Shown here: positions 3,042-58,298 of the stretch, piece after piece
How the letters are laid out: each line of letters begins with the position of its first letter
Position numbering within the stretch: position 1 is the first letter of the stretch
From: Octopus sinensis
Lineage: Eukaryota
Length of the DNA: 64,000 bases
Assembly (NCBI RefSeq): GCF_006345805.1
Contig: NC_043018.1
Span: 13,082,001 to 13,146,000 of the forward strand
Direction: 5' to 3'
Program-made: the position numbers and the translations under genes
Notes under the pieces: generated by a model
The model's input: only the letters and a program-made list of their open reading frames with translations
What the model was told of the DNA's origin: nothing
Database searches by the model: none

Positions 3042-3277
3042 TTATTTGCGCAAGTGTCTCGAAGAAGTTGACCGTCCAGTTGTCTCATCTTTGGAAGCAC
3101 TGCCTCGTCGAAGTCCTGAATTAATTTGTGCTGATGGTGGAATCATATTTGATTGAACAGGATTATTTGGAACTCTAATTTGATCCTTGTTAACCTCAGT
3201 GCTAGTGGGGAGACCCCGATGTAGTCTGCTGCTACTGCGTTTCTCTCGCTCTCGTGTTCCAGGTCGTGTTCCAGACA
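3042..3277 (-). CDS. CSNK1D: CK1 distal terminal coding exon: (M)SGTRPGTREREKRSSSRLHRGLPTSTEVNKDQIRVPNNPVQSNMIPPSAQINSGLRRGSASKDETTGRSTSSRHLRK*
   Basis: Acceptor ttttcctttttgcag|TG is phase-1 compatible with exon 7 (A|TG). REREKRSSSRLHRG matches the vertebrate CK1 delta/epsilon tail motif RERKVSMRLHRG. Stop TAA at 3044-3042. Confidence 0.9.
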
Positions 3278-16487: not shown

Positions 16488-16493
16488 TTTATT
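16488..16493 (-). terminator. Poly(A) signal likely ending the proximal terminal exon (3' UTR ~1.1 kb)
   Basis: AATAAA on the minus strand, followed by U-rich and GU-rich sequence (gttgtttgtttt near 16435-16455). Confidence 0.55.
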
Positions 16494-16534
16494 GGCAGTT
16501 ATCTTAATAGCAAACTGATTCCATCATGTGATAC

Positions 16535-16708
16535 TGAAATCACCAACAAAGACATTCAGGTAGGCTAATATCTCATGGCCACTTCATATGAGTGTGAGTG
16601 CGTGTGTGTGTGTGTGTGCATTGAAATCACCAACAAAGACATTCAGGTAGGCTAATATCTCATGGCCACTTCATATGAGTGTGAGTGCGTGTGTGTGTGT
16701 GTGTGCAT
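16535..16708. repeat. Direct tandem duplication with an 87-bp period, each unit ending in (GT)n
   Basis: TGAAATCACCAACAAAGAC...GTGTGTGCA starts at both 16535 and 16622. Confidence 0.92.
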
Positions 16709-17609
16709 GTGTGTGTGTGTGTGTGTAACACCTGTACAAAGTCCATGTTCACACACACAAATGAATAAGGTTTATTTGCAACACTGAGTGTGATGTGATG
16801 AAGAATTTCAATTTAAAAAATAAAGGCATATATAATAGCCAGAGTTTGTAATCCATTCTATACTGTTCTGTAAACAATATGACAATTTATTTTACAAATT
16901 TTCTTGGAACAAAGACTTCTTTCAATTTTTTTTTTTTCCCAAAAAACATATTTTTCTCTCCAAAATTTATCACTTTTCACAAATAGACCCAGCCAAATCT
17001 ACAATTCTATTTATTTATTTTCAGTTTGATATATTTTTTTCAAATGTTAAACTATGTGCAGAAAATACGTTTTAGTTTGAAAACAAAACAATAGTCCCAA
17101 ATTAACAGGTTCTATTGTATGTACAACATATATTGTTTGTGTGTGTGTGTGTGTACTCTTTTAGAGTTCAAGTTAAAAAGAATGAGTAATAATCTATTTA
17201 TTTGGCTGGAATGGTAATGGTTGTTTGAGGCCATTTTATTTTTAATAATTTTGAAGTTTTACAATTAAAAATATGAAAAAATAATTTCATTTCTCTGAAT
17301 TAGACCAAAAAACAATTCCTTTCACCTTTATAAACAGAGAATGTTTGTGTATGTGGAAGTAAGTTTCACATTCTAGCAGCGTATTTAATACAACAAAATA
17401 TTACGCTGTGTGTTGAGTAGAAACTGAGAAGCCAATGTACACACACTGATCGGGTTAAATGCAGTAGGAACAATGCTTTCTTTAGCTTCACCACAGTGAT
17501 AGTAGCAATAGACAAACCATTACGCTCATACCCAAGACTTGGGGCTGATCTCTTATTTTTCCCCCTAATTGCAAAATCCCAGTGTCTTTTCCTCTTTTAA
17601 TCCACCATA

Positions 17610-17869
17610 TTATGGTCTATGCTTTGGAACCATGCTTCGACGTTGTTCTGGCAGAATTCCACGTAACTTTGCGTTATCGTGTGAAGTTCCAATGGGCAAA
17701 GGCAAGGCCGAGGCGCGGAGACTCGGCCGATCTCCAGTCGATGGTGTGGCCAGTCTGCTCTCACTCATTTTACTATCAGTTATGGCTTCAAAGGATTCCG
17801 AGTCCCTGGTGGCCAGGGACAGACGCGTAGGTAGTTTATCCTTACACCGAGCTTGAAGACCACGAGAAT
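17610..17869 (-). CDS. CSNK1D: Putative alternative (proximal) terminal coding exon of CK1: (N)SRGLQARCKDKLPTRLSLATRDSESFEAITDSKMSESRLATPSTGDRPSLRASALPLPIGTSHDNAKLRGILPEQRRSMVPKHRP*
   Basis: Checked codon by codon: open for 85 codons in the phase-1 frame after the acceptor cttcttttctgtcactcag|AT. It is preceded by >100 nt of pyrimidine-rich sequence and is a GC-rich island in AT-rich DNA. The product is Ser/Thr/Pro/Arg-rich like CK1 tails. Missing from the ORF track. Confidence 0.72.
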
Positions 17870-35407: not shown

Positions 35408-35549
35408 TGCCATAATCGCCACTGGGAGAGGCTGCCACAGCTACTTGATCAGATCGCATACGGCCAGCAGTGGTCGTACCTTGTAATCCTCTAGCTGTCG
35501 AGCTGTACATTTTGCGATCTCTATCAAAATCATCATTTGACCTACCTCC
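35408..35549 (-). CDS. CSNK1D: CK1 exon 7 (142 nt, ends in phase 1), start of the regulatory tail: GGRSNDDFDRDRKMYSSTARGLQGTTTAGRMRSDQVAVAASPSGDYG
   Basis: Lies within ORF 35400-35687. Acceptor tttgtcttgcag|GGA and donor GGCA|gtaagt. In frame with exon 6, and similar to the vertebrate FGASRAADDAERERR segment. Confidence 0.93.
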
Positions 35550-36255: not shown

Positions 36256-36404
36256 AAATTTTAGCAAGTTCCAGTCAAAGACATAGTCATAAGTAAATCC
36301 TTGACGGTGGAAGAGATTTCTAAATAGCTGCCTCAAATAGGAATAATCTGGTTTATCATCAAACCGTAAGGACCGACAGAAATTTAAGTATGTTGCAAAT
36401 TCCG
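36256..36404 (-). CDS. CSNK1D: CK1 exon 6 (149 nt): (S)[49 protein letters not shown]
   Basis: Lies within ORF 36238-36450. Acceptor ttcttttacag|CG and donor TTT|gtaagt. Confidence 0.97.
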
Positions 36405-37563
36405 CTGTAAAAGAAAAAAATAATTGCAAAATTAGATTAAAGAACAGCACCTATGATTCTTTCCAGAGGCCCCAAAACCATAAGGTTGCAAGCAAGCTTT
36501 TTAACCATACAGCCATGCCTGTACCAATGTTAACTTTTTATTTTATATAACTGGGACAAATATCTGACCAGATTATATAAAAGAATTGGGAAAATAGTTC
36601 CTATTAAACACAGCCCAACTTAGAACTGATGTGAAACAACAAAATCAAGACATTTATGAAATATAACCAAAAAAAAAAAACCCAAGAAACTGGATAAGAT
36701 AGTAAGATAATCTAAAAGGAAGTAGCAAAGTCAACAGAATTTAGAGAAAGCACCAATCATGGTTACTTCATATAACAGTTTTTGTCCATGCTTGAAGAGA
36801 GAAATACAGGCCACACCTAGCATCTTCGCAGCATGTGTACTGAAACATATGTAACCCGAGTAAGGTTGCTAATTTAAGAAATTTTTTCATTTATTTATTA
36901 TTATTTTTTAATTTCTTTTTTTTTGAGGGGTGGAGTCTGAATAACCAAATTTCTGATTATATAAGACATGTAGTGTTTGCAGAAGAGGAAAATTACTGTT
37001 GCTAGTCTTTGATGATATCAATTCTTTGCAACTATACTTTTTCTTTTTCTCTTAATTCCTTTGATGCCAATCCTAGAGACCATATCTGGTTCTGTTGTAC
37101 AACGTCACCCGTTTCAAAATGTTTAATTGAAGCCAATTGATATTGTACTTCTATTTGGAATAATTTATCCATAACGTAAGTGATGTTATAAGGTTTTTTT
37201 CTTTTTTTAGGAACATGATATTGCAAGATTTTTCTCAAAGTCAGCGTGAGACACCTAAAACTCCACTGTGTCCTTTCTTAGACAAATGACTCACTATCAC
37301 TACACACCTTAAGAATCATGATCAAGGGTGGAATACCTTTGATTGCAGGTTTTTCTCCATCAGGGATGACATAGGGCTTACCAAAAACTAAACTAGGACT
37401 CTTCAATGATATTTATTAAAAAGAAAACTATTTCAAACAACAATTAATACTACAAGAGACTTCACTTAGAATTCTAGAAGTCATCTTTTTTGGCAACTTG
37501 ACCAGAATGCTTCCCAGTCTAAACGTTCTAAAGCCTGATTAAGGAGAAACTTTACTTCCTCTT

Positions 37564-38015
37564 TTAACCCTTTAGCATTTAAACTAGCCACATCAAGCCC
37601 AAACATTTTACCTGTTTTATGTTCAAAACAGCCAAATTCAGTCTATCACACCCTACAAAGTCATTCTAAAAATAAACAATCACAGCATCAAAATCTCAAG
37701 GCTACAAAATCATAATCAATAAGCATTATATTTGACAAGTGAGGTCGTTGCCAGTGCCGCTGGACTGACTCCGGTGCTGGTGGCACATAAAAAACACCAC
37801 TTGAGCGTGGCCGTTGCCAGTACCGCCTGACTGGCCCTCGTGCTGGTTGGAGTTAGGAAGGGCATCCAGCTGTAGAAACTCTGCCAAAACAAGATTGGAG
37901 ACTGGTGCAACCATCTGGTTCACCAGTCCTCAGTCAAATCGTCCAACCCATGCTAGCATGGAAAGCAGACGTTAAACAACAACAACAACAAACAATCTGA
38001 ACACGAAAGGGTTAA
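37564..38015 (+). mobile_element. TTAA-flanked MITE (piggyBac-type ends) interrupted by an RTE tail. Other copies at ~4085-4245, 6015-6220, 19600-19678, 39145-39355 and 54985-55140
   Basis: TTAA|CCCTTT at 37564 and AAAGGG|TTAA at 38006-38015. Shared internal motifs AAACAATCAC...ATCTC.AAGCTA...TAAGCATTACATTTGA.AG. Confidence 0.7.
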
Positions 38016-38423
38016 AGGACCAACAATATTCCATCCGGTCATCCATCTTCTCTGCTCATTATCATTATGAAAGTTGTGGGAATAGAGTTCTCAAGCAGCT
38101 CTTCTAGAGTCCTATCATTAAACATACAACACTATTCATGAGTCAAACACCAGCTTGGTGCCAACAATCATTAATAATAATACACTATCTTTAAATTAAT
38201 GATTGTAAGCAGGACAAAATTACTGTGCACATCCAACACTACATTCAGATGAAATTTCAAAATTGAAAATACCAAGCTCATAAAAGGTTTAAAGTCAAAA
38301 AAGCAGGAATAAAAGTAAAGAAAAAATATTGAATTAGATAGAACTCAAGGAAACTAAAGTACATGAAATAACCGTGTTAACACAAAGCGGAGGCAAATGC
38401 AAAAACTGGTTACAATTACTTAC

Positions 38424-38594
38424 AAGGAAATCCTTTACAAAGCTCTTCAATAGGTGTTGACATTTTCTTTTCACTAATTCTTTCATATTTTTGTCGTTTG
38501 GTTGCTGCTTTCAATCCCTGCCATGGCAAGCTTCCTCTCAAAAAATACATGAAAACATATCCTAATGATTCCATGTCATCTCGTCTACTTTGCT
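38424..38594 (-). CDS. CSNK1D: CK1 exon 5 (171 nt): (E)[56 protein letters not shown]
   Basis: Lies within ORF 38416-38625. Acceptor attttcag|AG and donor CCTT|gtaagt. Confidence 0.97.
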
Positions 38595-39384
38595 CTGAAA
38601 ATATTAGTAACACATTAATTAGCAAAAGAAAACAACAAAATCACAAAGATAACATCATTTCCATTTTTTTATCATTTTTTTGATACTGATGGATGGCAGC
38701 ATCCATAAAGTAATCGTACACCACAAGTACGGCATTTCTAATCACATCCTCATAAATTATGAAGTCTTTTTGCAAAAAAGATGACCAAATGAACAGCTTC
38801 AGTAGTATTGTTCTTCACCATTGTAAGACAGCATTTGTATTTCTTCATTCTGACTTGTGTAGAAAAATTATATTTTGGGAAACTAATAAAGATTAAGGAT
38901 GGTGGGTGAATGACAATCTATGTATGCATGCATACACGCATATATATGATGGCTGCAACTTGATTTTGAGCAATGCCACTGCTTGGTGGTTGTTGTAATG
39001 CTGCATGGATGTGGTAACAAAGAGTAGTAATTCCTGCAGTAGGTCTTCGCAGAGCTTATCACCCATGCTGACACAGGCCTTCATTCCACTATGGGATTTT
39101 TCATTGTAGGTTTTGATTTTTTTTTTGGCTTTGGTCAATAACACTTTATCATTTAAACAGCCTTATCAGGCCCAAATATTATACCTTTTTAATGTTCATA
39201 CTGGCTGGATCTAGCCTCTCACACCTATCCAATAACATCATCCTAAAAATAAACAATCACATCATTGAAGTCACGAAGTTACGAGATAATGCATCATTGC
39301 TTCAAAATGATGTGAGTAAATAAGCACTGCATTTGACAGAGTAATCTGAATGCGCAGAAGTGTTTGTTCGACCAGGTGTTGCTG

Positions 39385-39502
39385 GCTTAATTACGCACGA
39401 CTCAAGTTAGAGACGGGGTGCGTATTATACATAAGGTTTAGGTTTTCCAGAGGTACAGCCCCCTAAAAATCCTCTGCGTATTATACTTGCGGATTTACGG
39501 TA
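39385..39502. mobile_element. Probable terminal fragment of a Tc2/pogo-like DNA transposon
   Basis: Repeated GCGTATTATAC motif ending in GGATTTACGG|TA, typical of CCGTA-type termini. The other end was not found. Confidence 0.4.
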
Positions 39503-40741
39503 ATTTTTTTTACCAGCTGAGTGGAGTGCAGCCTGAAATAAAGTGTCTCACTCAAAAACACCATGTGCCACCAGATACTGGAGCCAAAATCATGAGCTGA
39601 ATATTCTTCTTAACCAGTAAACCATGTGCTTTCACATGCCAGAAACAGTATTGCTGCTGTTAAACAGATAAAAAATAATTTACATGTCTTGCAAGAACTC
39701 ATCCACTAAGAACAGCAAAACACTCAATCCTCATTAGTTGCATTTCCAAAAAAGTCAAAAACTACCATTCTGCCAAACATTCTTATGTTCTTCAAAAAAC
39801 CTCAACTTACTAAATAGATAAATATTACATTTCTAATTTTATCTCCAACTCTCCTGTTTTGGAACAGAGGTGTATTAGAGTTATTTGGAACCTGCTCAGG
39901 GCTGAAGACATCCAGCTTTACCATTTTTTTTTTCCTACATGAATCTAAATTAGGGTAAAATCTGTGTCCATCAGACAAGTACATTCTTGTGACAACAAGA
40001 AAAAGTCACCACCTTTCAAGAAAGCAACACAATGAGAGCTAGTTCGTTGTTACCTTTTTGTTTATTACTACAATAAGCACCAATACTCTCTCTCGTCTCA
40101 TCAAAATAGCACTCCCACCCACTCCTCCAATCCCCAGCTCTTGTTACCTTTATTCCCAGACTTACTAAATGTTGTCCTATCCTTTATTGTCCCAGAACAT
40201 TCTTATAAAATTCCTTTCAAATGCACAATTTTATTCATCACTAGCTGTAATCATATAAAACTTTCTAAGTCCACACTAATCACAAATCTTTTCATTTAAA
40301 CGACTGTTTTTGTTGTTGGGTGTTAGCGCTATGCAAACTATACTTCTTGTGCCAGTGTAAGGTGGTGGTGGGGGAACCAGATTGTACTTCAATGTATATC
40401 CTAGTACTGGATTTTACATATTGCTGTTGTTAACCACACTGCTACAAATATGAATTGAACTTCTTATCATGCTAAATGGCTAAAGTAAGCAGAGTTATAT
40501 ATCTTGTTTACAATTACACAATACAAAAGCTGTAATGATTTTCTTTTTAAGCATTGACTATGCCGTCCAGGCCTCTGACATCCATTGTCCACACACACAA
40601 AATTACCCATCAATAAATTATTAATCTTGCCATAAATTTTTTTTTTAAAATCTTTCATTTCTTGTAACAAAATTCTTCACAACGAGACCAATGACAACGA
40701 TTAATGATGGTGGTGATAATGAAAATGAAGTCGTTACTTAC

Positions 40742-40970
40742 CTATTCCTAAATGTGTGTTTATACTAGCATATCTTGCTGTGCCAGTTAAGTTTTTATTT
40801 TCTCGATAAGAAATATGTTGGTGAGACCTTGGATCCCTGTACTTTTTAGCAAGTCCAAAGTCAATAATATAGACTAAATTTCCCTTTTTCCCTAATCCCA
40901 TGAGAAAATTATCCGGTTTGACATCTCGATGGATGAAATTTTTTGAATGAATATACTCAATCCGACTTAT
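40742..40970 (-). CDS. CSNK1D: CK1 exon 4 (229 nt): [76 protein letters not shown]
   Basis: Read manually (absent from the ORF track). Acceptor aacttcag|ATA and donor ATAG|gtaagt. Contains HRD, DFG and the CK1-specific SIN motif. Confidence 0.97.
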
Positions 40971-43900
40971 CTGAAGTTAGAAAAATAAAAAATAGTTAAT
41001 ATTTTAAGGTCTTTAAGTGTGCATATCAAAATATTAAGGATAGAATACATCTGATCTTTAAACTGAAATAAGATGTGTTTATGAAGCTGCAATATTTGTT
41101 GTGATGAAATGTTAAAAAAAAAAAAGAAAAAGAAAAAGAAAAAGAAAAAAAAGAAGCATATTTGATGCTTTCCAAAATGGCCAAAATTTTCGTTTAACAT
41201 TTTTCATAATACAGCATATATACAATACATACTGTGTTTGTATACTTGCTACATTATATACTATATACAAATATTCTGGCAAACCTGAAACAATAATGCT
41301 TATCATTTTCTTTGAATACTTATGAAAATTATCTTCCTTAAAATATCTAAAATATCTTTAAATGCTCTAATTCGCTCCTCAATCTCTCTGCGAAACCAAA
41401 AATACAATTTATTTTTAAATCAAACATTCAAAACACTGAACCCGACACAGCTCACACAAAGGGAGAGATTCCCAAAATCTGAACTGAACCAATGTGCTGA
41501 CATTTCCAAAATACCATCAACCCATGAAAATATTAGACATTAACACCAGGCTTACCACTTATAGAAGTGGAACCATGTAGTTATCACCTGCCAGTCAACT
41601 ACATAACTAATTGCATAACACAGCACCAGCCATTATTACATCTTCCCAAATTTCAATTATGAAAGATTTTAAAACAGCGCAGAATGTTATTCTCAACATT
41701 TTTGACAGTAAATTCTTCCAAATTGTACACCGCAATCTTATCTTTCACACACGTATACGTAACCATTAGAGAGATAAATAATTTGCAGTGCTCCAGCATG
41801 GATGCAGTCAAATAACTGGAACAAGTAAAAGAATCTAAGATTAAATAAAAATAAGTAGAATTATCTAATTTGGCCAGATGTGCTCAGTATTTGACTTCAA
41901 ATCAAATTATCAGTCATTGCTCTGTTTACTGACTATGTAGTAGTAGTAGTAGCAGTAGTAGTACTATTACTACTTGATAGTAATGCCTGATACAAGAAAT
42001 GTCATCCAAGCATAAAACAAGTGGTTTCCATATGTACACTGATAAGATCTTAGCAACTCTCGACCAATTTCCTCATTCTTTCATTAATATCTCTGATAAA
42101 TTTAAAGGCTAAAGCTGAGCAGAATCAATTTTTCTCCATTTCTCACATTTAATAATATTCCATAACAAAACAAAGTTTGCTCCCCTGTACAAAATTCTGT
42201 TTTCAATATTAACCATAAATTACCCAACTTGTGCAGTGTTGATGTTCTTGTAAAAGAATAATCCTTTATCTTATTTGATACTGAAATCCAAATGGTATTT
42301 AATGTTTTGTAAAACATTTTGAATCTTGGACAAAAACATTTTTCCAGGTAGTGAAATAAACTGTTTTACTTTGAGAATCACTTCTCAGCCAATTAATCGA
42401 CTTCTCTGGGACTGAGTCAACTTAAGAGCAGATATGTGGTTACTCAACTTGCTAAAAACAAACAGTTCTATTTTTAAGAAGGAAGGACACCAATAACAGA
42501 ATTAAATTCATTAGAACTGAAAGAAATTACAGAATGATCAGCTGAAATTCCTTCGCTCATAATTCTGCTGGGACTTAACGAGAACCTGAGTTTTGTAACT
42601 GGATGCTTAATTTTAAAATCATTTGAAATTTCAGATATCTTTAAAAACTAAACTTATCCATCATAGTCAGAATCACAGCTTAATCCTTTTATCACCCCAC
42701 CCTCCACCTACCTTGTATACCTTGCTTCTAAACAACAATTCATAGACTAGTTTATAAGATTCAGGATCTTGTACAAGTATATTCTTTGGATTCCACTTGT
42801 AACAGTAATTCATTTACATCTAACAAGACACTGACATTTATTTTATGGTTCTCAGTCAGCCAAAAGGTCACCATTACAATCAGTGTTTCAAATCACTATA
42901 TTGATGAGTATTGTAGTAATATAAATGAAATAATAAATAAACATTGAAAACACCTAATACCACCACATAAATGCACAGATAATAACATACATCTATAATA
43001 CACACACACACACACACACACAGAATTTTTACTGTAACTAGACAAACTAATTTGGTTGCCTCCTTCACTAGAGATAACTAGAGATAACCTACAAATACCA
43101 ATCCTAATAATTTTGTAGCCATTTCACAACACACAGCTACCCTTTCTTCCTCGTCATAATGTCTGGAGTAGGATTAGTCAATATCAGATTGCAATATAAC
43201 TTGGACAATTTTACAAAAGGCAATATTAAAAGAAAATCCTTTAGGCAACTGATATATATATGTATATATTATTACCCAATATATTACAATCACCACTAAG
43301 TCAAAAAAAAATAAATAAATAAATACCAAAACCCTTTTCAAATTTACAAATTGTACTTAATTGTGCCCAAGAAGATCCAACCTCCACAACAGAAGGGTTA
43401 AGGCCACATCCCCTGATGTAGAGGACTGGCCTGCCATGTAAAAAGCGTTTTATGTTGGCACCATGTAAAAGCACTTGTGCCAGTGTCACATTAAAAGCAT
43501 CCAGCTGTGGAATTCAAGCCGAATCAGACTGGAACCTGGTACAGCTCTTCATCTTGCAGGCTCTGGTCAAACCATCCAACCCATGCCAGTATGGAAAATG
43601 GACATTAAAGGATGAGAGAAAGTAATCTCTACTGATAGAACACACCTCTGAGGTCTATGCAGTCACTTAACTAGCTTAGAACAACCAGAATTTCCATGAA
43701 ACCAAATCCTACTGTCTTGAAGACAGACTGGATTTACTTTCTGAGATACAAAATTGAATAGTCATAGACAGAATGCCTGAAAGCAGTGCTCCGACATGGC
43801 CTTGGCTTTGCTGATTCAAAAGAAATGAAAGAACTTTGATTATAGGTCTGTGTGAGAGGAATTACTATCAGGCCCAAACAAAAACAATCAACAGTTAGAA

Positions 43901-45353
43901 AGGGAAACAAGAAAGTGTTCCTTCTGTATGACGACACCCCCACCCCATTGAGGGATCTCTATTGAAACACATTCACATGTGTTGCTGCAACACAGTGTAA
44001 GCCATCACTTTGTAAGGCCAGGATGTTGCTCTATGACAAGAATTTCATCAATCAATATACATAGTCATATTGAAACAAAAAGTGATTGGAGTGTGTGTGT
44101 GTGCTTGCGTACATGTTGAGAACATACAAACATTAATTTGCCTGAGATAGTCATATGCTAAACATTTTAGCATCTTGAACATTCGTAGTTGAAAGTAACT
44201 TAAGCAAGTTAAAAGTTTATTTCTCTGAATTTTTGCAAAATATCAGTTTCATAGTAAAATGTAGCATTTTCTGTTGTAAGCTGTAAGCGAATACAAAAGC
44301 CAAAACACCATTCACTATTTCCATTTCAATAATTTTATGAATAATCTGTGGCAAAGATATTAAAAATGTGCTGAATATAATAGCTGATTATTTTACATGT
44401 GATTCTAGTTGTTATGAAAACAATATTAGCACTTTTTATTATATCAGATATTAAATGACAATTATTAGCAAATAAATAATAAAAAAAACTGTTTCTTTCC
44501 GGGTAACATATTTATGTGAGAAAAAATGTCCCCACCTTTTCTGTTGCTTTACTTAGCACGACATATTCCAAATGGTATCATAATTTACAAACCAGCAGAG
44601 AATTTACCTCTCAATACACCCGATTCTTTTGATCATTTCTCTCCAATAAATATCTTAAAACTAACAACTGCAGTAATGGTTGTATTAGACTTTTAAAAAA
44701 AATTTAAATCAGAAATTTCACAAAGAGCTGAAACAAATGTCATAGAGAATGATGAGTGTATCTTTTAATTACTTCAGTCATTAGAATGTGGCCATATTGG
44801 GACACAACCTTGAAGACTTTAGTTGAGTCAATCGACCACAGAACACGTTTTTTTTTTTGTTCTTTTTAATAAAGCCTGGTACTTATTCTGTCAGCCTTTT
44901 TTACCATTTCCATTGATGGGGAAAATTACAGCAATGTCACCGCTCATAGCTGAATGATTTTCACAAATATAAAGACATAAGGGATAAACACACTTATGCA
45001 TGCACATGCACACACACACACACACACACACAATTGAGAGGCTTCTCTCAGTTTCTACCTACCAAATCCACTCACAAGGCTTTGGTCAACCCAGGGTCTG
45101 CAGTCAAAGACATTTGCCCATGATACTGTAAAGTGTTATTGAATACATTCCCTACACTCTAGCTGCATTAATTAGAAATATTACAAGTGAAAAGTCTCTC
45201 TCCATCAAAAAGGATATTTTCAGAGAGCAAATAAGTTTGGTGTAAAAATTCATAACAAAAGAATAAATGAACAACACTAGTGACTAGGTTCAAATAGACA
45301 TCAAAATATACAATACAAAATAATTAAAAAATTAAGGAAAATCAAATATTTAC

Positions 45354-45502
45354 CAACTGATCTGCAAGCAAAAGCACAGTTTTTGGACTGAATTTTCTTG
45401 AACAGAAATTAAATAGATCTTCAAGACTGGGACCAAGAAGCTCCATTACCATGACATTGTAATCGCCTTCAGCACCACCCCATTTGATTGTGGGAATTCC
45501 TA
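45354..45502 (-). CDS. CSNK1D: CK1 exon 3 (149 nt): (V)[49 protein letters not shown]
   Basis: Lies within ORF 45342-45536. Acceptor ttttcag|TA and donor TTG|gtaaat. Encodes the hinge (MELLGPSL). Confidence 0.97.
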
Positions 45503-48169
45503 CTGAAAATAGTTTAAAAAAAAAAACAAAGTTCAAAATAATGCCTTTACATTTAAAATTCTGACATAAAAAAAAATAAATAAATTTAATATTCCAATTC
45601 AGTTTGAGAACTTTTTACAATAAACCAATTAACAAAGACAAAAACTATATAGCTTTTAAAATTACAAAATATGAAAAAAAATAATTTAGAGCCTCTGCTA
45701 GAATCAATCACATATGTATATATAATTGTTTCTGATATAGGCACAAGGTCTGAAAGTTGTTGGGGGGGGGGTGAATTACATCAACACCAATATTTCACAT
45801 CTTATTGACCCCAAAAGGATGAAAGATAAACTCAACCCCAGCACAATTTGAACTCAGAACAAAAAGCTGGAAGAACTGCTGCTTAGCATTTTGCCCAGCA
45901 TGCTACCAATTCTGCCAGGTTGCTGCCTCATCTATGACTATAGAATAAATTAACTAATTCACAATTATTATTACACAAGTAAATGATGTGATCAGAGTAA
46001 AAATTAAACATACATTTATTGCTTGTTTTTCAAACAATTTACAATTTTTGTTTTTCAAATCCTCAGTATCAATCTATTTTAACAAATCTTTTATTACAAG
46101 GAAGTAAAATATCAATTTAATTCATACTTGATAAATAAACATTTTCATAAATCTTTTATTGTGTCTGGGGAGAGTGAACACACGAATTCCCATAAAGAAT
46201 CTTGCAAACCAAACACAAACAATATTCAGTTGTTATATGAGGATACAGGCAGGGCTGTGTGATTAAGGAGCTTGCTTCTCAACAATGTGGCTCTGGGGTC
46301 AGTCTCACTTTGCAGCACCTTCAACAAAGTGCCCTCCACGAAAACCCCAAGCCATCCAATGCTTAATAAAGGAATTTGGTAGACAGAAACTGCAAGAAGC
46401 CGTGTGTGTGTGTGTGTGAAGGTTAATAAACTATGCTGCACTATGGTTACAAATAGTGACGTCACTATTTGTGGCTGAGCTGATGGTCATTGACATTTCC
46501 CGTCAACAAACTGTCTGCTAGTTCTGTCATCAAGTTCCTTTGGAATAAAATCAACTCCCTTAGCTTGGAAAACAGGTAAGGGTTGGCAACCAGAAAAGCA
46601 TCCAGCTGTAAAAATACTGCCTTAATTACCTCCCATCTAAACCACGGTAAAAACAAACATTTAGTGGAATAAATGGATGAACAAAGCTACAAAACCTTCC
46701 ATTTGTAACTTGGTTAGCAATGTCAATCAATCAGTGATGGCTTCACAATAACATTTCTGTTTGCATTCAATAACCCATATTTTTCATAAACTACCCCCAC
46801 CAATAACCCAATATTGGGGGGGGGGCAGTTTATGAGGAACCCATTGTGTATGAAACAACATTAAGGGAGCCTTTCCTTCATTGAACAAGTTTATTGATTC
46901 ATTGAACTCTACAAGTGTTTTGCCAAACCAACAAAGAAGAGCGTACGGCAGCTCAAGTTGCTGGAATGTCTCTCAAATGACACAGCGAATAATGAAGTCC
47001 TGGTTGTATTAACTTAGGAAATCTAATCAAATGCTAACAGTTGGGAAGCCTTCAATCACAGAATTGACCTGGGGCTTCACAACATCAACAGTACTTTGTG
47101 TGCACATAGTTGTTTTATTGTGAAGGTTGGACAACCTTTTTCCAGAAGTGGATCACATGAGACATGACTCATCATCTGGCATGTTGCACTACTAAAAAAA
47201 GTGAAGATAATTTTCCATTAGCCATGCCATTCAGAAAGTCCCATGGGCTGCAGGTTACCCAATCTTGAGTTTCATTAGACTCCTGTAATCATTTGCTCAT
47301 TCAACCTTATGTCAATTCATCATTAATAATTTTCAAGTTGATCAAGATTAGTTCCATTTTTTCCCCTTGTTAACTTTAGTCTAGTTGGTACAAAAATAAG
47401 CTTATATGAAATAGATAAATAAAAAGGTTTGATAATAAAAAAAAATTAACAGGTCAAGGCTTAATTTTTTTTTTAAATCAGCAAAAATGATCTTTTCCAT
47501 TTTTCATCTGAATTTTGAAGGTAATAAAAATAATTTAATCTTTGACATCTAAGACAAAATGTAAAAAAAATAAATAAATTGACATCAAAATCCTTATTTT
47601 ACATTGAATTGCTTTACTTTATGATAACATTGAAAGTATTGATCTCTGACCTTGTGACCTTTCAAATAATAAATATACAGATAAAATATGGTCTATTTAA
47701 AATAAATGTTATATTGGTTCACTGCTAAAAAAACCACTGGACTTCTGAACAAGAACCCTACCAACAGACATTGTACTCTATGCCCTTGTGGTGCATAAAA
47801 ACCTTTCAGCTGAATACAATTGTAAGCAACAATCACACCTACTTCTAATTTCACTGGTCAGTGAGTGTTAACAACTGCTCTAAAACATCTGTTTTGTTAG
47901 TCATAAATAAACAAAATGAATCAAATGGACTCTTGACAAGAGTAAACTTACACAATATGTTGGAAGATAAAAAATTGTTTTAATCAAACAAATCACGAAA
48001 ATTTTTAAACAGTAATTGATAGATAACCTTTGTTTCACCAATAGAAACAGTGTCAATCGGTTTCTAATGATTTTAAAAATTTTGTAGATTTTTCAGTATC
48101 AAGCTTTAGAATTTATCTTTGTACAATTGTTTTGAGCAATAAGTCTAAGCCAACAGACTCCTACATTGA

Positions 48170-48700
48170 TTAAGACTATGACCAGAGACTGGGACCTTTG
48201 GAAGTATGCTGTGCATGGGAAGACCCGGCAGGACAAGTGAGACCATAACCCGTGGCCTCTATCTGGGACGTAGCCAGCCCACTTATGCATACCTTTTCTT
48301 CTTGTGACACAAACCCTACTTGTGAAGACCTGTTGAGGCAAGTAAAAATCAAAATCGATCAACATCAATGGAAGTTGTAGCTGTGATACCAGTGCCGGTG
48401 GCACGTAAGAGAACCGTCCGAACGTGGCCGTTGCCAGCGCCGCCCCAACTGGCCTCCATGCCGGTGGCACGTAAAAAGCACCATCTGATTGTGGCTGTTG
48501 CCAGCCTCGTCTGGCCCCCGTGCCGGTGGCACGTAAAAAGCACCATCCGATCGGGGCCGTTTGCCAGCCTCGTCTGGCACCTGTGCAGGGGGCACGTAAA
48601 AAGCACCCACTACACTCACGGAGTGGTTGGCATTAGGAAGGGCATCCAGCCTTCTGGCTTCCCAGACCCCAGTTGAACCGTCATGATGATGACGATGATG
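48170..48700 (+). mobile_element. 3' end of an RTE-type LINE: ORF C-terminus (MTRDWDLWKYAVHGKTRQDK*, 48178-48240), 3' UTR with ~55-bp tandem units and a (GAT)n tail
   Basis: The ORF end resembles RTE C-termini. There are four GCCGGTGGCACGTAAAAAGCACC-type units, then TTAGGAAGGGCATCCAGC and a gatgatgac tail. It identifies the many short copies listed separately. Confidence 0.75.
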
Positions 48701-49823
48701 TCCTGCACTGTGGAACAAAGTCAAGATGCACTTTACTGCCTCCCCAACATCATATTCTGTAGAGTGGAACTTCAGTGCAGTTACCCAGACTCTTTCTAAG
48801 CAAAGAAACAGACTGAAAATTACTGAATGTGGGATTTGAGACTACTTCTTAGTACCTTTCAGCCTGATACTGAGAAGCTCATATCCCAGCACAATATACA
48901 TACATCACCTTAAGAATATGGAGGAAGGAAAAAGACATAGGTGAAATGTAAATTTATTCTTTCATATAGTAAAAAACAAAAAGAGTTAACTATCTTTTAT
49001 TTGCTTCAGTCATTAGACTGCAGCCATGCTGGGGCATCGCCTTGAATAACTTTTAGTCAAGTGAATCGAACCCCAGTGCTTAATTTTTTTGCTAAGCCTG
49101 GTACTTAATTTATAAGTCTCTTTTGCCGGACTACTAAGTTATGTGGACATAAACATACCAACACTGGTTGTCAAGTGTTGGTGGGGACAGACACACACGC
49201 ACACACACACGTATATACAACAAGCTTCTTTCAGTTCCTGCCTACCAAATTTACTCACAAGGCTATAGTAGAAGACACTTGCCCAAGGTGCCACACAGTG
49301 GGATTGAACCTGGAACAGTGAGGTTAGGAAGCAAGCTTCTGACAACACAGCTTTGCCCGTGCTTAGCTTTTATATGTGAAACATAGTTGTTTTGAATTTG
49401 CAGTAGAAAGAGGTCTCTGTTTGTGGTGGTGGGCATGTAGGAAGGCGCTAGGAATGTGACCCGAGAGCCAAAGGAGAGACAGTTCAATAAGGTTCGGAAA
49501 CAACTGGTTCAGTCAAACAAATCGATCCCAGAACTTACTTCTTTACTAAACCTGGTACTTTTTTCTAATGGTAGCTTTTTGTCAAACTGCTAAGTTACAG
49601 ATATATAAACATACTAACACAAAGAGACACACACAGATATATATATACATATACAATGGGTTTCTTTCAGTTTCTGCCTACCAAATCCACCCACAAGTAT
49701 TTGGCTGGCCCAGAAAACACTTGGCCAAGGTGCCACACAGTGTGATTGAACTTAGAACTATGTAGCTTTTGTTATACAACCAGGCCTGCACTTAGTCACA
49801 CCTGTGTGTGTGTGTGTGTGTGT

Positions 49824-49868
<45 letters not shown>

Positions 49869-50469
49869 GTGTATGTGTGTATTCTAAAACTTAATCCAAA
49901 TTTTTTTTATTAAAAGGAAGATAAAACAAGGAGAAAGAGGCTACGATAAAATCTGTTGGAATCACTGCTACATTGAAATACACAATTACATGTAACCACC
50001 TGAATAACCCTGAACTGTGAACAAAGCCATTGCTGAAGTGTAAAGATTGAACAAGGGGAATATTACACTGCTTTTAGATGACAAATTCATAGCAGTGAAA
50101 GTGATAGCAGGTATTGATGTTTAGCATAACAAACAAGTTTTACAGGACTGTATTTCAAAGACTAGCTGACTAAACAGTTGATGACTAATGGATCAGTACA
50201 ACTAGTATGTTTTATTGCAACATAAAAAAAAAAACTAAAAAAAAAAATCAAGAATCAGACACAGTAAAAATAATAACAGAAAGATATATTCTTATGATAA
50301 CAAAGAACCGTTTCAAAGATTTAGAAATATCTTAAGTAGAGTGTGTCAACTGTTTAAAAATAGAATAAAATGCTTAATAGTTTATCACTGATCAGGAAGT
50401 AAAAGTACAATTATAAAATTTTTTTTTTTTTTTTGAAATGATGATAATATAGCTAATTACATGATAATA

Positions 50470-51341
50470 CGAGGTCTGATCAATAAATATCCGGACGGTT
50501 GCCATAATAACGAAACTAAAGCACACAGGGTGAAGCCACTTGGCACAGATTGGCCTTGAACTCTGCTGTGCATGCGCACTAATGATTCACATTCTAGCTC
50601 ACTTCCGCTGCTTACAGCAGTGCTTGGAAGGAAGGTGTGTAATCATCACACTGACCATGACAGAGAAAGTTGTCATGGCGATACCTGCTCAGAGGCCTAT
50701 GCAAAGTTGCAGAAAGTGGATGGAGAGGAGTGTATGAGCCACGCACAAGTGTAGGAGTGGTCAGACGTTTCTAAGATGGCTGAAAAAAATATCGATAATG
50801 ACGAATTTTCTGGGAGACCCACAACCAGTAGAACTGAGGAAAACATCAGATATGCATGCAGCTTTGAGGGGAAATTGTCAAATCACCATCCATGAGTTAT
50901 CAAAGGATGTGCAGATTAGTTATGGTTCAGTTCAGTCCATTATCACTGAAGATTTGAATATGAGACATGTCTGCCAAGTTTGTGTCAAAACTGCTTCCAG
51001 CTGACCAAAAAGACACTCGGGTTTCAGTGGCACAAGATCTTGATTCTGTTGAGAACGATGAAAACTTTGCATAGGTCTCTGAGCAGATATCGCCAAGCTT
51101 TTGGCGAAATTTGATGCAGATTCTCTGCTCAACTTTCTGTGTCATGGTCACTGTGACAATCACACACTACACACCTTCCTTCCAAGCACTGCTGTAAACA
51201 GCAGAAATGAGCTAAAACATTAACATTTAGTGCACATGCACTACAGAGAGGTCAAGGTCAATCTGTGCCAAGTAGCTTCAGTCTGCGTGCTTTAGCTTCG
51301 TCACTATAGCAACGGTCCAGATACTTATTGATCAGACCACG
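50470..51341. mobile_element. Non-autonomous mariner-type element with two inward-facing 5' ends (long inverted arms) and TA target-site duplication
   Basis: TA|CGAGGTCTGATCAATAAATATCC... at the left end and ...GATACTTATTGATCAGACCACG|TA at the right end. The interior encodes decayed transposase N-terminus (EQRICIKFRQKLG; SGRPTTSRTEEN; TEDLNMRHV). Confidence 0.9.
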
Positions 51342-52039
51342 TACACTGGGAAAAAAAAAAAAAAAGTACAACTAAAACCCTATCCCCATCAGTGTTTAAC
51401 AGTGATACACAGTGCTATATGGACCTCAACTTACAAAAAATTAAATTGGTACATTTAATATTAAGCAGAAAAGACAATTAAACCAAGTTGATTTTAATGT
51501 CTAAATTACCAATCATTAAAAACTTTAAAATCTGAACCATTCCAAGCACTTGGAAATAATCATAAAGCAACATTAAATATATATTAAAATGTCGTATATC
51601 TCAAGCTGTTACACTTGAACATCTCATTTATCTATTAAAAATTAAAAAAAACAAAACCAACTGACATAAATCTATTTCTAAATTGCTGGCACAACTAAAT
51701 AGGTCTAAAAAAAAAAAGAAAAAAAGAGTTAGCTTGATTAAGAAGAAAAAGAAACGCAATTCAAAATAAATTTGGAGTTAAAGTTCTAACAGAACAGTTG
51801 ATGTGAAATTTCAATATTCCTAAGATATGAGACAAGATTTATACTAATATAAAGACAATAGCATCTAAAACAATCATTAAGATTCATAAACATTATAGAG
51901 AAATACTTGACTCAGGCAAAGGCAGAATAGACACAAGGTTGAGGTATTTGACAACTAGGTGCAAGGTTCATTGTTCCAATATTAATTTAGCCAAGAGAAA
52001 TAATAATAATAATAACAACAATGACAACAATAATAATAA

Positions 52040-52825
52040 TCTTTTCTATTCTAAGCACAGGCCTGAAATTTTGGGGGAGGGGGCCAGTTGATTAGATCGA
52101 CCCCAGTACACAATGAAATGCCGCTAAGCATTTTGCCCGGCGTGCTAACGTTTCTGCCAGCTCGCTCCTTTAGGAAGTATAATATTCCTTTCTACTATAG
52201 ACACAAGGCCTGAAATTTCAGGGGAGGGGATAAGTTGATTACATCGACTCCCAGTGTTCAACTGGTACTTTTTTTATCGACCCCAAAAGGATGAAAGGCA
52301 AAGTCGACCTTGGTGGAATTTGAACTCAGAACATAAAGACAGCCGAAATACTGGTAAGCATTTTGCCCAGCGTGCTAATGATTCTAATAATAATCTTTTC
52401 TATTGTAGGTATAAGGCCTGAAACTTTCGGGGAGGGGACTAGTCAATTACTTGACCCCAGTGTTTCACTGGTACTTATTTTATCAACCCTGAAAGGATGA
52501 AAGGCAAAGTCAACCCCAGCAGAAATTGAACTCACAATGTAAAGACGGACGAAATACCTACCACTAAGCATTTTGCCCAGCAATTTTGGCAGCTACAACA
52601 ACAGCAGCAGCAACAATAATCCTGTCTACTATAGGAACAAGGCTGGAAATTTTGAAAGAGAGAGAGTCAACTATATTGACCCCAATGATCAACTGGTACT
52701 TATTTTATCAACCCTGAAAAGGATGAAAGACCAAGTCAACCTTGGGGAATTTGAGCTCAGAGCATGAAGATGGAAGAAATGCAGTAAAGCATTCTGTCTG
52801 GCATGCTGACAGTTCTGCCACCTCA
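52040..52825 (-). mobile_element. Four tandem copies of tRNA-derived SINE family B. Single copies at ~15110-15330(+), 29440-29590(-), 45730-45930(-) and 58925-59095(+)
   Basis: The unit GGCCTGAAATTT...CGACCCC...AAAGGATGAAAGGCAAAGTCGACC...GAATTTGAACTCAGAAC...TAAGCATTTTGCCC recurs about every 200-230 bp. Confidence 0.85.
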
Positions 52826-55800
52826 ATACCTTCATGACAATAATAAAAGACTGTCTTAATTCAAGAAAAGCTGTAACACAATAATGAGATCAATCAATAT
52901 AAATGCATGTTGAGGATTTAATTTGGAAGTGAAAGTGCAACTGCAAAACAAAGAATTCCAGGTATGTGAACCGGACACTGATCCTGTAGTTTTCCATTTA
53001 TTCAAGAGGGAGCTAAATAAGGATGTCACTCCTTAAACCACAAAACAATCTACTCCAGAGATCTGTTATTAACCCTCTTTGACAACAAATCATCTCAAAA
53101 TACCTGTAGTTCTACAACAGAACAATCTCCCTTTTAAACTGTTTATATTTCAGTCAAAGCCTTCTATTATAATTATTACAAAACTATAAAAAAATTACTT
53201 TACTAAATACTTTCAAATTTTTGATTATTTGCAATAATAACTGAAACAGTGTATAAGTAGTAAGGCCATGAAAGCTACATAAATAAAATATATTTAATCT
53301 GTACAGGATAGATAGATTCACAACAAAGTATGAAAGAATATGAAAAAGGAAGTGATAACAATGTTTCCAAGAACATCAGAAATAATTTAAACAATAATTC
53401 TAAAGTCAGAGAGAAGAGTAAAAATTGCACAGAACAACATTCATTAATCATCATTTTTATGCTTGCATTTCCATGCCAAGATGGGATGGATGTGTTGAAA
53501 CCAGTATTCTTCAGCTGGATGCACTTGGATATTGAGCCTGACTTCTTTATACGAACCTCTGAACTGAGTAATTTTGTTTACGTAGGACACAAACATTGTT
53601 ACTGATTGGTGTCAATGAAAAGATGTAGAAAAACAAATACACACAAATGCAAAGGGCTTGCTTAGAGTTTTCTTCTACCAATCTCCACACACAAGATCTT
53701 GGTAATCTAAGGATACAGTAGAAGACACTAGTCAAAATACCACACAGTGGTACTAAACCTGAAAGTACATGGTTGCAATGCCAACTTTTTAACTGAACAG
53801 TCTTGCCATATTAGAAAAAATGAAAAGCAATGACCGTCAAGTTCAGAGTCTACAACTACTAAACACATGACCAAGGATTGAAACCTTTTACTATGGCAGC
53901 ACAACAGATAATTTCAGCCTTAATTTTCTTGTCTGACATGACTTCTCTTTCACTTCACAATAGTAAAAAGGAAATCAACTATGGTAATAATAGGCAAATT
54001 TCACAAGTATTACCAAAAATCATAATAACCAAAAATATAATTGGAGTGGTTATTTTACAGTTAGATGGCCTTCCCCCACAACTGGCAACTTAACGATTCC
54101 CACTGCTTAATTTAGACATTGTAATATTTCACATCTTTAAATTAAGTCACTGAAAAATGATCTCATGCATCAAACCACATGCATCTTGAGCTTTTGAGGA
54201 TCCTGTGGGCAATTACTCCTCTTCAGGCAAGGTGTGTGTGCTCAAACTCATCATTCGAGTTTCATTCAGCTGCATATAAAACATATTTTGCAAAAGTACA
54301 CATACAATATACATGTTTGCTAATTGTAACTACCTCTAGTATTATCAAACAGAATAGATTCCAAAAGACAACAGGTAAAAATTAACACAAATCATTAAGA
54401 GAGACCAGAGAAGAAAAACAAACAAAAACCAATCGCCGTAACAGTAAGGTTTGTCCAATCAAATGGCAGGATCTCAGTACTGTATTCAATGAAAGAAATT
54501 TTAATGAAAAATACATTAGGATTTCTTGCAGACTGGTGAAAAACAATAATTGTAAATGCACGAGATATAAGTAGAGCTATTAGAGATGCGGGTAGCAAGG
54601 GAAGGTTTGAAAGAAAAACTGTGGTTAACACAAATGGCTTACAAGAAAACAAAGATAAATTCTGCTAGTTAGAATGTAGTATATATAGAGTCACTAGGAT
54701 AAAAACGGACTGGGACAGAGTCCAGAGAACTGTTACTTCCAATGGTATTGAAAGGTTTTGCTGTGTGTAAGAAAGGCAGACGATATATAAGACATCATAT
54801 AACAGTGAAATATGTATGGATGCTGAACACAGAAGACCAACAATGAGTGGGGAAACGAAAAAAGATAACATATGATCCATTGAATGTGCAAGGCTGGATA
54901 CAAATAAATTAAAGCAGCTTGGTACCTGAGCAATTAGCAATGTACTCGTTAAGCTAGCCAGCTTGGCCAGTGTGTGTGTGTGTGTTTAACACTTTAGCAT
55001 TTAAACTAGACCTATCTGGCCTCTCATACCTACCCTACAATGTCCCTGTAAATAGAAACAATATATATGAAATCTTGAAGCTAATATGAATAAAATAAGC
55101 ATTACATTTGAGAGAGTTATCTGAATGCTGCAGGGTTAATGTAATGCTACATGCTGAACGAAATAGCTAAGAGACAACTGGGTCCTTCCTTTGAACCATT
55201 TGTTCTTCAGTCCCACCATCAAACATAAGTTACAAGGCAACTTCACTAGTGCTGGTCAAAAAATAAAAGAAAACAAATGCAGCAGACACTGTAAAGTGGT
55301 CGGCATTAGGAAGGGCATCAAGCCATTGAAACTGCCAAAACTGAGACACTGAGGAAAGATGTCTTCTGACCCATTGGATCCAATCAAACCATGCCTCCTG
55401 CATGGAAGACTCATGTAAAATGATATCTTTTGCTTTTGACTGGTGACAAGAGGGGTCAAGTACAGCCATCAAAACCATGCAACAACATTAAATAGAATTA
55501 TGGCAAAACCAAAATTCTAACAGAAAAAAAAAAAAAGTTCCTGACATCAGGAGATAGTTCACTAAAATTTCATGAAAACAACATAGACTAATGTATAACT
55601 ATAGTTACAGAGCAATTATATAAAATCCAGATTATTTGAAAATCATTGAGTTTTATCTCATGATCAACCAAAAGGAATTTCAAAATTTATTTTTAGTAAG
55701 ACAGATCACACGTTTTAAAATTATCTGCTACCCCAACCAAATCTTATTTGAAATATTATTTCATATTCCATCACAATCAATGATTGGTAACAATTACGAC

Positions 55801-58251: not shown

Positions 58252-58298
<47 letters not shown>

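What the first reader, a model, noticed from the sequence alone, without database searches (positions are those of the whole stretch)
17610..17869. Second, unrelated C-terminal tail for CK1 delta/epsilon encoded by an alternative last exon
Seen: exon 7 ends in phase 1 and can splice in frame either to the distal exon (3277) or to this 85-codon exon. This exon has a long pyrimidine tract, its own stop and a downstream AATAAA plus GU-rich element at ~16490. The distal tail keeps the RERxxSxRLHRG motif; the proximal tail lacks it and is a different Ser/Thr-rich sequence. Known: the CK1 delta/epsilon tail is autoinhibitory through phosphorylation, and vertebrate delta1/delta2 tail variants differ in activity on PER2. 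Inference: one kinase domain with swappable ~80-aa regulatory tails chosen by splicing or polyadenylation, a larger swap than the vertebrate one.
Basis: partly seen in the sequence, partly recalled or inferred. Interest (0 to 1): 0.75.

Follow-up and report, generated by a model that had tools for sequence, protein, structure and literature searches.

The report
Alternative C-terminal tail exon of octopus CK1
The octopus casein kinase 1 delta/epsilon gene does carry a second last exon that swaps the whole ~80-residue regulatory tail, but this isoform is already in RefSeq; the only addition here is that the tail is conserved across molluscs and has not been studied.

Summary
On the minus strand, exon 7 (35549-35408) ends in phase 1 at a GTAAGT donor. 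It can join in frame either to 17869-17610 (N + 85 codons + TAA) or to the distal exon 3277-3042, which carries the canonical RERxxSxRLHRG...SRHLRK tail.

ORF length alone does not distinguish this exon, since 19 open stretches of at least 85 codons lie in the same intron. Comparative evidence does:
- dN/dS against a related octopus is 0.075, and the exon has no indels while its flanks do.
- 10 of 11 substitutions against O. bimaculoides are synonymous.
- The same three-exon layout, with the same phase-1 junction, occurs in the limpet Lottia.
- About 30 exon-sized homologues end at the same C-terminus. The named ones are Acanthosepion, Lottia and Tegillarca.

The isoform is not new. Kinase plus proximal tail is identical to XP_029649506.1 (casein kinase I isoform X2, Octopus sinensis), and the O. 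bimaculoides version is XP_014777672.1. Kinase plus distal tail is XP_029649507.1 / XP_014777675.1.

The two tails show no detectable homology to each other. The proximal tail is predicted disordered and has no Pfam family. Different autoinhibition or targeting by the two tails is inferred, not shown. No paper describing this tail was found.

The parts
35408..35549 (-). It encodes GGRSNDDFDRDRKMYSSTARGLQGTTTAGRMRSDQVAVAASPSGDYG and ends in phase 1 (A|gtaagt).
   Evidence: the same phase-1 'A|GTAAGT' end is seen in Lottia L005 and in L007/L008
17870..18070 (-). Pyrimidine-rich tract and AG acceptor of the proximal terminal exon.
   Evidence: 71% pyrimidine over 200 nt, the 99th percentile of the intron; 90-94% identical to two other octopus species, against 83-92% for the intron further upstream
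17610..17869 (-). Proximal alternative last exon, coding part: split Asn codon + 85 codons + TAA (17612-17610). It encodes the 'RLATPS' tail.
16488..17609 (-). Probable 3' UTR of the proximal exon. The end is not determined; there are ten AATAAA/ATTAAA hexamers, the last at 16493-16488.
   Evidence: 96-97% identity to O. bimaculoides over 17609-17167, which is above the identity of the exon's synonymous sites. Conservation continues to about 16500, where the O. bimaculoides assembly has a gap
3042..3277 (-). Distal last exon, coding part: split Met codon + 77 codons + TAA. This is the canonical CK1 delta/epsilon tail (REREKRSSSRLHRG ... RRGSASKD ... SRHLRK).
36256..61045 (-). Kinase-domain exons shared by both isoforms: 61045-60935, 45502-45354, 40970-40742, 38594-38424, 36404-36256.

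Best explanation
Window 17869-17610 (minus strand) is a genuine alternative last coding exon of the single octopus CK1 delta/epsilon gene; the window matches Octopus sinensis.

The donor of exon 7 (35408, phase 1) can be joined in two ways:
- To this proximal exon. The message is then presumably cleaved and polyadenylated in the conserved flank downstream of 17610, giving a 428-aa kinase with an 86-residue 'RLATPS' tail.
- To the distal exon, 14.3 kb further on at 3277, giving the 420-aa kinase with the canonical RERxxSxRLHRG...SRHLRK tail.

Both tails are Ser/Thr-rich and disordered, and they share no detectable sequence. The arrangement is old. The same order (exon 7, proximal tail exon, canonical tail exon), the same phase and the same split Asn codon occur in the limpet Lottia gigantea. 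The proximal tail peptide is also found in cuttlefish and a bivalve.

Shown: the exon structure, purifying selection on the reading frame, deep conservation, and the existence of matching RefSeq isoforms.

Inferred from vertebrate, yeast and Neurospora CK1: the tail folds back on the kinase when phosphorylated, so the two isoforms should differ in autoinhibition, in the upstream kinases that regulate them, or in partners and localisation.
For: Structure:
- Searches give frame, phase, acceptor and stop.

Annotation:
- P0001 / A0A0L8GVM1 (O. bimaculoides) reads ...SPSGDYG-N-SRGLQ...KHRP, which is the exact junction.
- An exact-sequence look-up finds both full-length isoforms in RefSeq for O. sinensis and O. 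bimaculoides.
- The O. bimaculoides gene call spans both tail exons.

Selection:
- Against a related octopus (Logan contigs L001-L004), the exon is 94.2% identical with 0 indels, 11 of 15 substitutions fall at third positions, and dN/dS = 0.075 (P = 1.5e-5). The upstream intron is 82.6% identical and has indels.
- Against O. bimaculoides there are 11 substitutions, of which 10 are synonymous, and no indels.

Deep conservation:
- phmmer against 1.84 billion representatives gives 11 hits.
- A profile search gives 27 hits. All are exon-sized ORFs ending at the same aligned C-terminus, with invariant R38 L39 T41 P42 R47 S49 S53 P56 K67.
- Named members are Lottia XP_009060169.1, whose model also joins an exon-7-like exon to the tail through a split Asn codon, Tegillarca KAJ8318489.1 and Acanthosepion CAE1305739.1.
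- The same three-exon order is seen in Lottia L005 and in the unnamed locus L008, with AG|A(C/T) acceptors in phase 1.

Disorder:
- AlphaFold2 with a 27-sequence alignment gives mean pLDDT 58 and no secondary structure.

Precedent for tail-dependent regulation:
-.
Against: - No RNA reads were examined here. The RefSeq and UniProt entries are predicted models, and A0A0L8GVM1 starts inside exon 7.
- The poly(A) site is not identified.
- One cuttlefish gene model (CAE1305739.1) joins the proximal exon to the distal exon instead of ending in it.
- Nothing here tests kinase activity, phosphorylation or localisation.
- ORF length and an AG acceptor alone would arise by chance in this intron.
Confidence: 0.87

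Rival explanations
1. The exon is mainly an internal cassette. A donor inside or near the end of the proximal exon joins it to the distal exon, so the protein carries both tails in series.
For: The Acanthosepion pharaonis model CAE1305739.1 reads ...LPEQRRNI|ILSGTRPVSREREKR..., fusing the two exons. O. sinensis has an 'isoform X1' that I could not retrieve, since the 428-aa form is labelled X2.
Against: - About 30 homologues stop at the same aligned position, and the peptide is conserved up to that stop.
- No phase-compatible consensus donor precedes the stop in octopus or Lottia.
- The cuttlefish model also uses an acceptor upstream of the conserved one and has an implausible N-terminus, which is typical of an ab initio model.
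- The RefSeq isoforms end in the proximal exon.
Confidence: 0.05
2. Only the first 24 nt are used, as a microexon (17869-17846, donor GGT|gtaagg). This keeps phase 1 and would insert NSRGLQAR ahead of the canonical tail.
For: The donor-like GTAAGG at 17845 keeps the frame and is present in all three octopus sequences.
Against: - The bases are also the conserved codons Arg-Cys-Lys-Asp, which explains their conservation.
- Lottia has no GT at the equivalent place.
- Purifying selection and deep conservation extend over the whole 85 codons.
Confidence: 0.03
3. It is a chance ORF or a non-productive 'poison' terminal exon whose peptide has no function.
For: Long open stretches are common in this intron. 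Other frames of the same GC-rich patch are also open, including two on the + strand. There is no Pfam family.
Against: dN/dS is 0.075 with third-position bias. The peptide is conserved from cephalopods to a limpet and a bivalve, with invariant residues and a fixed stop.
Confidence: 0.02
4. It is a separate small gene nested in the CK1 intron, not part of CK1.
For: The database holds it mostly as stand-alone short ORFs.
Against: - There is no conserved start codon.
- A conserved AG acceptor in phase 1 matches the phase of exon 7 in every locus examined.
- It always lies between the exon-7-like exon and the canonical tail exon of a CK1 gene.
- Gene models in three species splice it to CK1 exons.
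Confidence: 0.02

Closest known systems
RefSeq predicted isoforms of octopus casein kinase I: XP_029649506.1 (O. sinensis isoform X2) and XP_014777672.1 / XP_014777673.1 (O. bimaculoides isoform X1), versus XP_029649507.1 / XP_014777675.1
   Same: The window's exons 2-7 plus the proximal exon (with the N-terminus [26 protein letters not shown] supplied by guess) match XP_029649506.1 exactly. With the distal exon they match XP_029649507.1 / XP_014777675.1 exactly.
   Different: Nothing differs; this is the same object. The entries are computational predictions with no described function.
Vertebrate CK1 delta1 / delta2 splice variants (extreme C-terminus, XCT)
   Same: One kinase domain, an alternatively spliced end of a disordered autoinhibitory tail, and isoforms with different activity on PER2.
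   Different: [quoted passage not shown] Here the whole tail after exon 7, 86 versus 78 residues, is exchanged, including that motif. The two versions have no detectable similarity.
C. elegans KIN-20 (the CK1 delta/epsilon or Doubletime homologue) with three alternative 'exon 5' 3' ends
   Same: Alternative terminal exons attached to a shared kinase core, with all forms expressed.
   Different: No nematode protein was retrieved by the tail searches, so there is no evidence that the tails are homologous. Function is also unknown there.
Neurospora CK-1a long and short isoforms
   Same: Natural isoforms differ in the autoinhibitory C-terminus. Expressing only the short one gives a hyperactive kinase and a short period.
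   Different: The fungal short form lacks 23 tail residues; it does not replace them with a different conserved tail.

Membership tests
CK1 delta/epsilon subfamily kinase gene | Kinase domain highly similar to CK1 delta/epsilon | tested here: met
   83-95% identity per exon to human CK1 delta; the O. bimaculoides orthologue hits Pfam Pkinase; RefSeq name 'casein kinase I' / 'isoform delta-A-like'
CK1 delta/epsilon subfamily kinase gene | Canonical tail with RERxxSxRLHRG | tested here: met
   Met by the distal exon only (REREKRSSSRLHRG). The proximal exon lacks it.
Alternative last exon (splicing-coupled alternative polyadenylation) | One shared upstream donor and two downstream acceptors in the same phase | tested here: met
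   Donor at 35408 in phase 1; acceptors at 17869 and 3277, both in frame
Alternative last exon (splicing-coupled alternative polyadenylation) | The proximal exon has its own in-frame stop, conserved in position | tested here: met
   TAA at 17612-17610, conserved in three octopus species; homologues end at the same aligned column
Alternative last exon (splicing-coupled alternative polyadenylation) | The proximal exon has its own cleavage/polyadenylation site | tested here: inconclusive
   Ten AATAAA/ATTAAA hexamers lie between 17601 and 16488, and the flank is conserved. No 3'-end data are available.
Alternative last exon (splicing-coupled alternative polyadenylation) | Transcripts with each junction | not testable with these tools
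   Only predicted models carry the junctions. No read-level data could be queried.
Vertebrate delta1/delta2-type XCT variants | Variants share the tail up to about 16 residues from the end | tested here: not met
   Divergence starts directly after exon 7, and the whole 78-86-residue tail differs
Mollusc 'RLATPS' alternative CK1 tail (family defined here) | Core ...P-T-R-L-S-L-A...R-L-A-T-P-S-S-G-G-R-x-S-F-K-G-S-G-L-P-V-P...K-L-R-R... ending in a short basic C-terminus | tested here: met
   The octopus tail aligns over its full length. Invariant R38 L39 T41 P42 R47 S49 S53 P56 K67 are present, although cephalopods have diverged (STGDRPSLRASALPLP).
Mollusc 'RLATPS' alternative CK1 tail (family defined here) | Encoded between the exon-7-like exon and the canonical tail exon of a CK1 gene | tested here: met
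   Window, O. bimaculoides L009, Lottia L005, L008. L007 shows the exon-7-like exon upstream but the canonical exon lies beyond the fetched DNA.

The most novel reading that the evidence does not exclude
The proximal tail belongs to a previously undescribed, pan-molluscan (possibly wider) family of alternative CK1 delta/epsilon tails. It has been kept next to the canonical tail exon since before cephalopods, gastropods and bivalves split. Its invariant R-L-A-T-P ... R-x-S ... S-G-x-P ... K-x-R core looks like a set of short linear motifs or phosphosites. It would then be a natural whole-tail swap that gives the kinase a second mode of autoinhibition, upstream control or targeting. No paper in the searchable library mentions it.
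Probability: 0.55. Interest if true: 0.45.

Novelty: already known. Interest (0 to 1): 0.3.

Why it matters
How the disordered tail controls CK1 delta/epsilon is an active question for circadian timing and Wnt signalling. In mammals a change in 16 residues between delta1 and delta2 alters autoinhibition and period.

Molluscs appear to have kept two complete, unrelated tails on one kinase over a very long time. That offers a natural comparison for which tail features matter. It also offers a handle on clock and tidal-rhythm biology in animals where CK1 regulation has not been studied.

For genome annotation the case adds nothing new for octopus. It does show that several mollusc gene models are split or fused at this exon (Lottia, Tegillarca, Acanthosepion, and the 2015 O. 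bimaculoides model).

Tried and rejected
- **Tail-only word-index search.** It returned only A0A0L8GVM1. This was misleading, because relatives are hidden inside clusters whose representative lacks the tail. CAE1305739.1 sits under a 91-aa representative, and the full-length isoforms sit in kinase clusters.
- **Search with exon 6-7 plus the distal tail.** It found no full-length octopus protein, for the same reason.
- **The look-up of encoding contigs for P0001, P0102 and P0141.** None is on record, so no cuttlefish or O. sinensis DNA was obtained.
- **Pfam on 12 tails.** Nothing meaningful.
- **Ancient exon duplication of the two tails.** I suspected this because of SR-x-[KR]-[DE]-R...RL at the start and LRR...GR...S-[ST]-S-R at the end of both tails. 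hhalign gives probability 0.1%, so it is not supported.
- **ORF length as evidence.** Rejected, because such ORFs are common in this intron.
- **Structure of the tail.** The prediction is disordered, so no fold search was run.
- **Long ORFs elsewhere in the window.** They are low-complexity or repeat-like and were not pursued.
- **Species and library type of runs SRR11869384/90/91/94.** Not found in the literature, so I cannot say whether contigs L001-L004 are genomic or unspliced RNA.
- **Taxa of the unnamed ENA/Logan/JGI contigs.** They could not be determined, so distribution outside molluscs is unknown.

Full report
**What is in the sequence**

The window carries most of a CK1 delta/epsilon gene on the minus strand. 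tblastn with human CK1 delta finds kinase-domain exons at 61045-60935, 45502-45354, 40970-40742, 38594-38424 and 36404-36256, at 83-95% identity. It also finds the canonical tail motif at about 3250. The first ~26 codons lie outside the window. In O. bimaculoides the gene starts about 22 kb beyond the point that corresponds to the window's edge.

The last shared exon, 35549-35408, ends GGC A|gtaagt, which is phase 1. The acceptor ...ctgtcactcag|ATTCTCG puts an exon start at 17869. A + AT makes Asn, then 85 codons follow, then TAA at 17612-17610. The distal exon starts at 3277 (tttgcag|TG TCT...), is also in frame, and stops at 3044-3042. The products differ in an 86-residue tail versus a 78-residue tail.

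**Is it more than chance?**

Not from the ORF alone. The 32-kb intron holds 19 sense-strand open stretches of at least 85 codons. Seventeen AG sites read at least 85 codons in the right phase. Other frames of the same GC-rich patch are open too. The decisive evidence is comparative.

- **A related octopus.** Four identical Logan contigs (L001-L004), about 85% identical overall, cover the exon. The exon is 94.2% identical with no indels. The upstream intron is 82.6% identical and has indels. Of 15 substitutions, 11 are at third codon positions and only 3 change an amino acid. This gives dN/dS = 0.075, with P = 1.5e-5 for that many synonymous changes under neutrality.
- **O. bimaculoides.** The orthologous locus (L009, CM046622.1) is about 88% identical in aligned non-coding DNA. 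It has 11 substitutions in the exon, 10 of them synonymous, and again no indels.

**Deep conservation**

phmmer with the 85-residue peptide against 1.84 billion cluster representatives finds 11 proteins. A profile of 12 tails finds 27. Almost all are exon-sized ORFs called on genomic contigs. They align end to end and stop at the same aligned position, with endings such as ...KQRQT...KQRP...RQRQQ and ...KGKR. Residues R38, L39, T41, P42, R47, S49, S53, P56 and K67 are invariant.

The named members are:
- Lottia gigantea XP_009060169.1
- Tegillarca granosa KAJ8318489.1
- Acanthosepion pharaonis CAE1305739.1

In Lottia (L005) the kinase exons are followed by an exon-7-like exon ending TTT AAT A|gtaagt, then the tail exon (ctctcag|AC ATG CGG...TGA), then the canonical tail exon (ttttag|GT ACC...RERERRTSTRLHRG...SKHIRK*). 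This is the same order, the same phase and the same split Asn codon as in octopus. An unnamed ENA locus (L008) shows the same three parts. L006 and L007 show the same AG|AT phase-1 acceptor, and L007 also has the phase-1 donor. The alternative last exon therefore predates the split of cephalopods, gastropods and bivalves.

**Is it already known?**

Yes, at the level of annotation.

- UniProt A0A0L8GVM1 (O. bimaculoides, 'uncharacterized protein', 120 aa) is Met-in-exon-7...SPSGDYG-N-SRGLQ...KHRP. That is the exact 35408->17869 junction.
- I guessed the missing N-terminus ([26 protein letters not shown]) and looked the full-length products up by exact sequence.
- Kinase plus proximal tail as encoded by the window is XP_029649506.1, 'casein kinase I isoform X2 [Octopus sinensis]'.
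- The version with Gly instead of Ala at FEAITD is XP_014777672.1 / XP_014777673.1, 'isoform X1 [Octopus bimaculoides]'.
- Kinase plus distal tail is XP_029649507.1 / XP_014777675.1. It clusters with an Argonauta hians 'isoform X3'.

The window therefore matches O. sinensis, and both isoforms are already catalogued. To my knowledge, NCBI's pipeline predicts extra isoforms only where transcript alignments support them. I could not check that here.

No paper in the searchable library describes this tail or mollusc CK1 isoforms.

**What the tail is like**

There is no Pfam family. AlphaFold2 with a 27-sequence alignment gives mean pLDDT 58 and no secondary structure, which indicates disorder. By my own count from the translations, 18 of the 85 residues encoded within the proximal exon (excluding the split Asn) are Ser/Thr, against 20 of 78 in the distal tail.

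The family consensus is ...K-[DE]-R-x-P-T-R-L-S-L-A-T-[RK]-G...S-[DE]-(S)-R-L-A-T-P-S-S-G-G-R-x-S-F-K-G-S-G-L-P-V-P-V-G...D-x-A-K-L-R-R...[KR]-Q-R-x. Cephalopods have diverged in the middle (STGDRPSLRASALPLPIG).

A profile-profile comparison with the canonical tails gives probability 0.1%. 'Unrelated' therefore stands, and my suspicion of an old exon duplication is not supported.

**How it most likely works**

The shown part is that this is an alternative last exon. The splicing machinery joins exon 7 either to the proximal acceptor, after which the transcript ends in the flank downstream of 17610, or to the distal acceptor 14.3 kb further on.

That flank is more conserved between O. sinensis and O. 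bimaculoides than the exon's own synonymous sites: 96-97% over 17609-17167, with good conservation down to about 16500. This fits a functional 3' UTR.

The inferred part concerns function. In vertebrate CK1 delta/epsilon, S. pombe Hhp1 and Neurospora CK-1a, the phosphorylated tail binds back on the kinase domain and inhibits it. Small tail differences change activity and circadian period. Exchanging the whole tail should therefore change which phosphosites mediate autoinhibition, which upstream kinases act on it, or which partners bind. The invariant Thr-Pro and R-x-S sites are obvious candidates for upstream kinases. None of this was tested.

**Rivals**

- **Tandem tails.** A cuttlefish model fuses the proximal exon to the distal exon. 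That model has an implausible N-terminus and a non-conserved acceptor. The conserved stop and C-terminal motif in about 30 homologues also argue for termination in the proximal exon.
- **Microexon.** A 24-nt microexon ending at GGT|gtaagg (17846) would keep the frame. Lottia has no such donor, and selection covers all 85 codons.
- **Chance ORF, poison exon or nested gene.** These are contradicted by dN/dS, by the conserved phase-1 acceptor without a conserved start codon, and by the constant position inside CK1 genes.

**Comparison with known systems**

The kind of feature, alternative C-terminal tails on CK1 delta/epsilon, is known from three systems:
- vertebrate delta1/delta2, which differ in the last 16 residues
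- C. elegans kin-20, which has three alternative exon 5s
- Neurospora ck-1a, which has a short form lacking 23 residues

The octopus/mollusc case differs in that the entire tail is replaced, including the RERxxSxRLHRG motif, by a second conserved sequence.

**Verdict**

The object is already annotated in RefSeq, so it is not a discovery. The modest added value is the demonstration of strong purifying selection and mollusc-wide conservation of an unstudied tail family.

Noticed in passing
window 16540-16720 (- strand): A ~110-bp unit (...CACGCACTCACACTCATATGAAGTGGCCATGAGATATTAGCCTACCTGAATGTCTTTGTTGGTGATTTCA) is tandemly duplicated next to (CA)n runs, inside the probable 3' UTR. O. bimaculoides has a single copy, so the duplication is specific to the window's lineage.
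   Followed up: partly
window 17167-17609 (- strand): The 440 nt after the stop are 96-97% identical to O. bimaculoides. That is more conserved than the exon (95.8%, nearly all changes synonymous) or the upstream intron (92%), which suggests constrained 3'-UTR elements.
   Followed up: partly
window 17846-17869 (- strand): The first 24 nt of the exon end at a donor-like GGT|GTAAGG that keeps phase 1, so a microexon isoform (insert NSRGLQAR before the canonical tail) is formally possible. The site is present in three octopus species and absent in Lottia.
   Followed up: partly
P0102 (Acanthosepion pharaonis CAE1305739.1); L005 5472-12667 (Lottia); P0121 (Tegillarca): Public gene models are broken at this exon. 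The cuttlefish model fuses both tail exons. Lottia splits the gene into a 310-aa kinase model and a 134-aa 'partial' model. The Tegillarca model reads through the acceptor from intron sequence.
   Followed up: partly
RefSeq O. sinensis casein kinase I gene (not in window coordinates): The 428-aa proximal-tail form is labelled isoform X2 in O. sinensis, so an isoform X1 exists that I could not retrieve. The 428-aa product is also 'not on record' as the longest product of its gene. A third variant may exist.
   Followed up: no
window 35480-35500 and 17853-17867 (- strand): Exon 7 contains STARGLQG and the proximal exon begins (N)SRGLQA. Lottia has STARALQG and (N)MRGLSS. This is a short repeated motif at the two sides of the junction, of unknown meaning.
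   Followed up: no
window 6350-7190 and 30500-31210: These GC-richer patches have long open stretches in several frames on both strands. The translations are low-complexity (SLSLSL...) or repeat-like, so they are probably microsatellite or transposon remnants rather than exons.
   Followed up: no
(database behaviour): Searches against cluster representatives missed the cuttlefish homologue and both full-length octopus isoforms. Each of these sits in a cluster whose representative lacks the queried tail. Exact look-up of a reconstructed full-length protein recovered them.
   Followed up: yes
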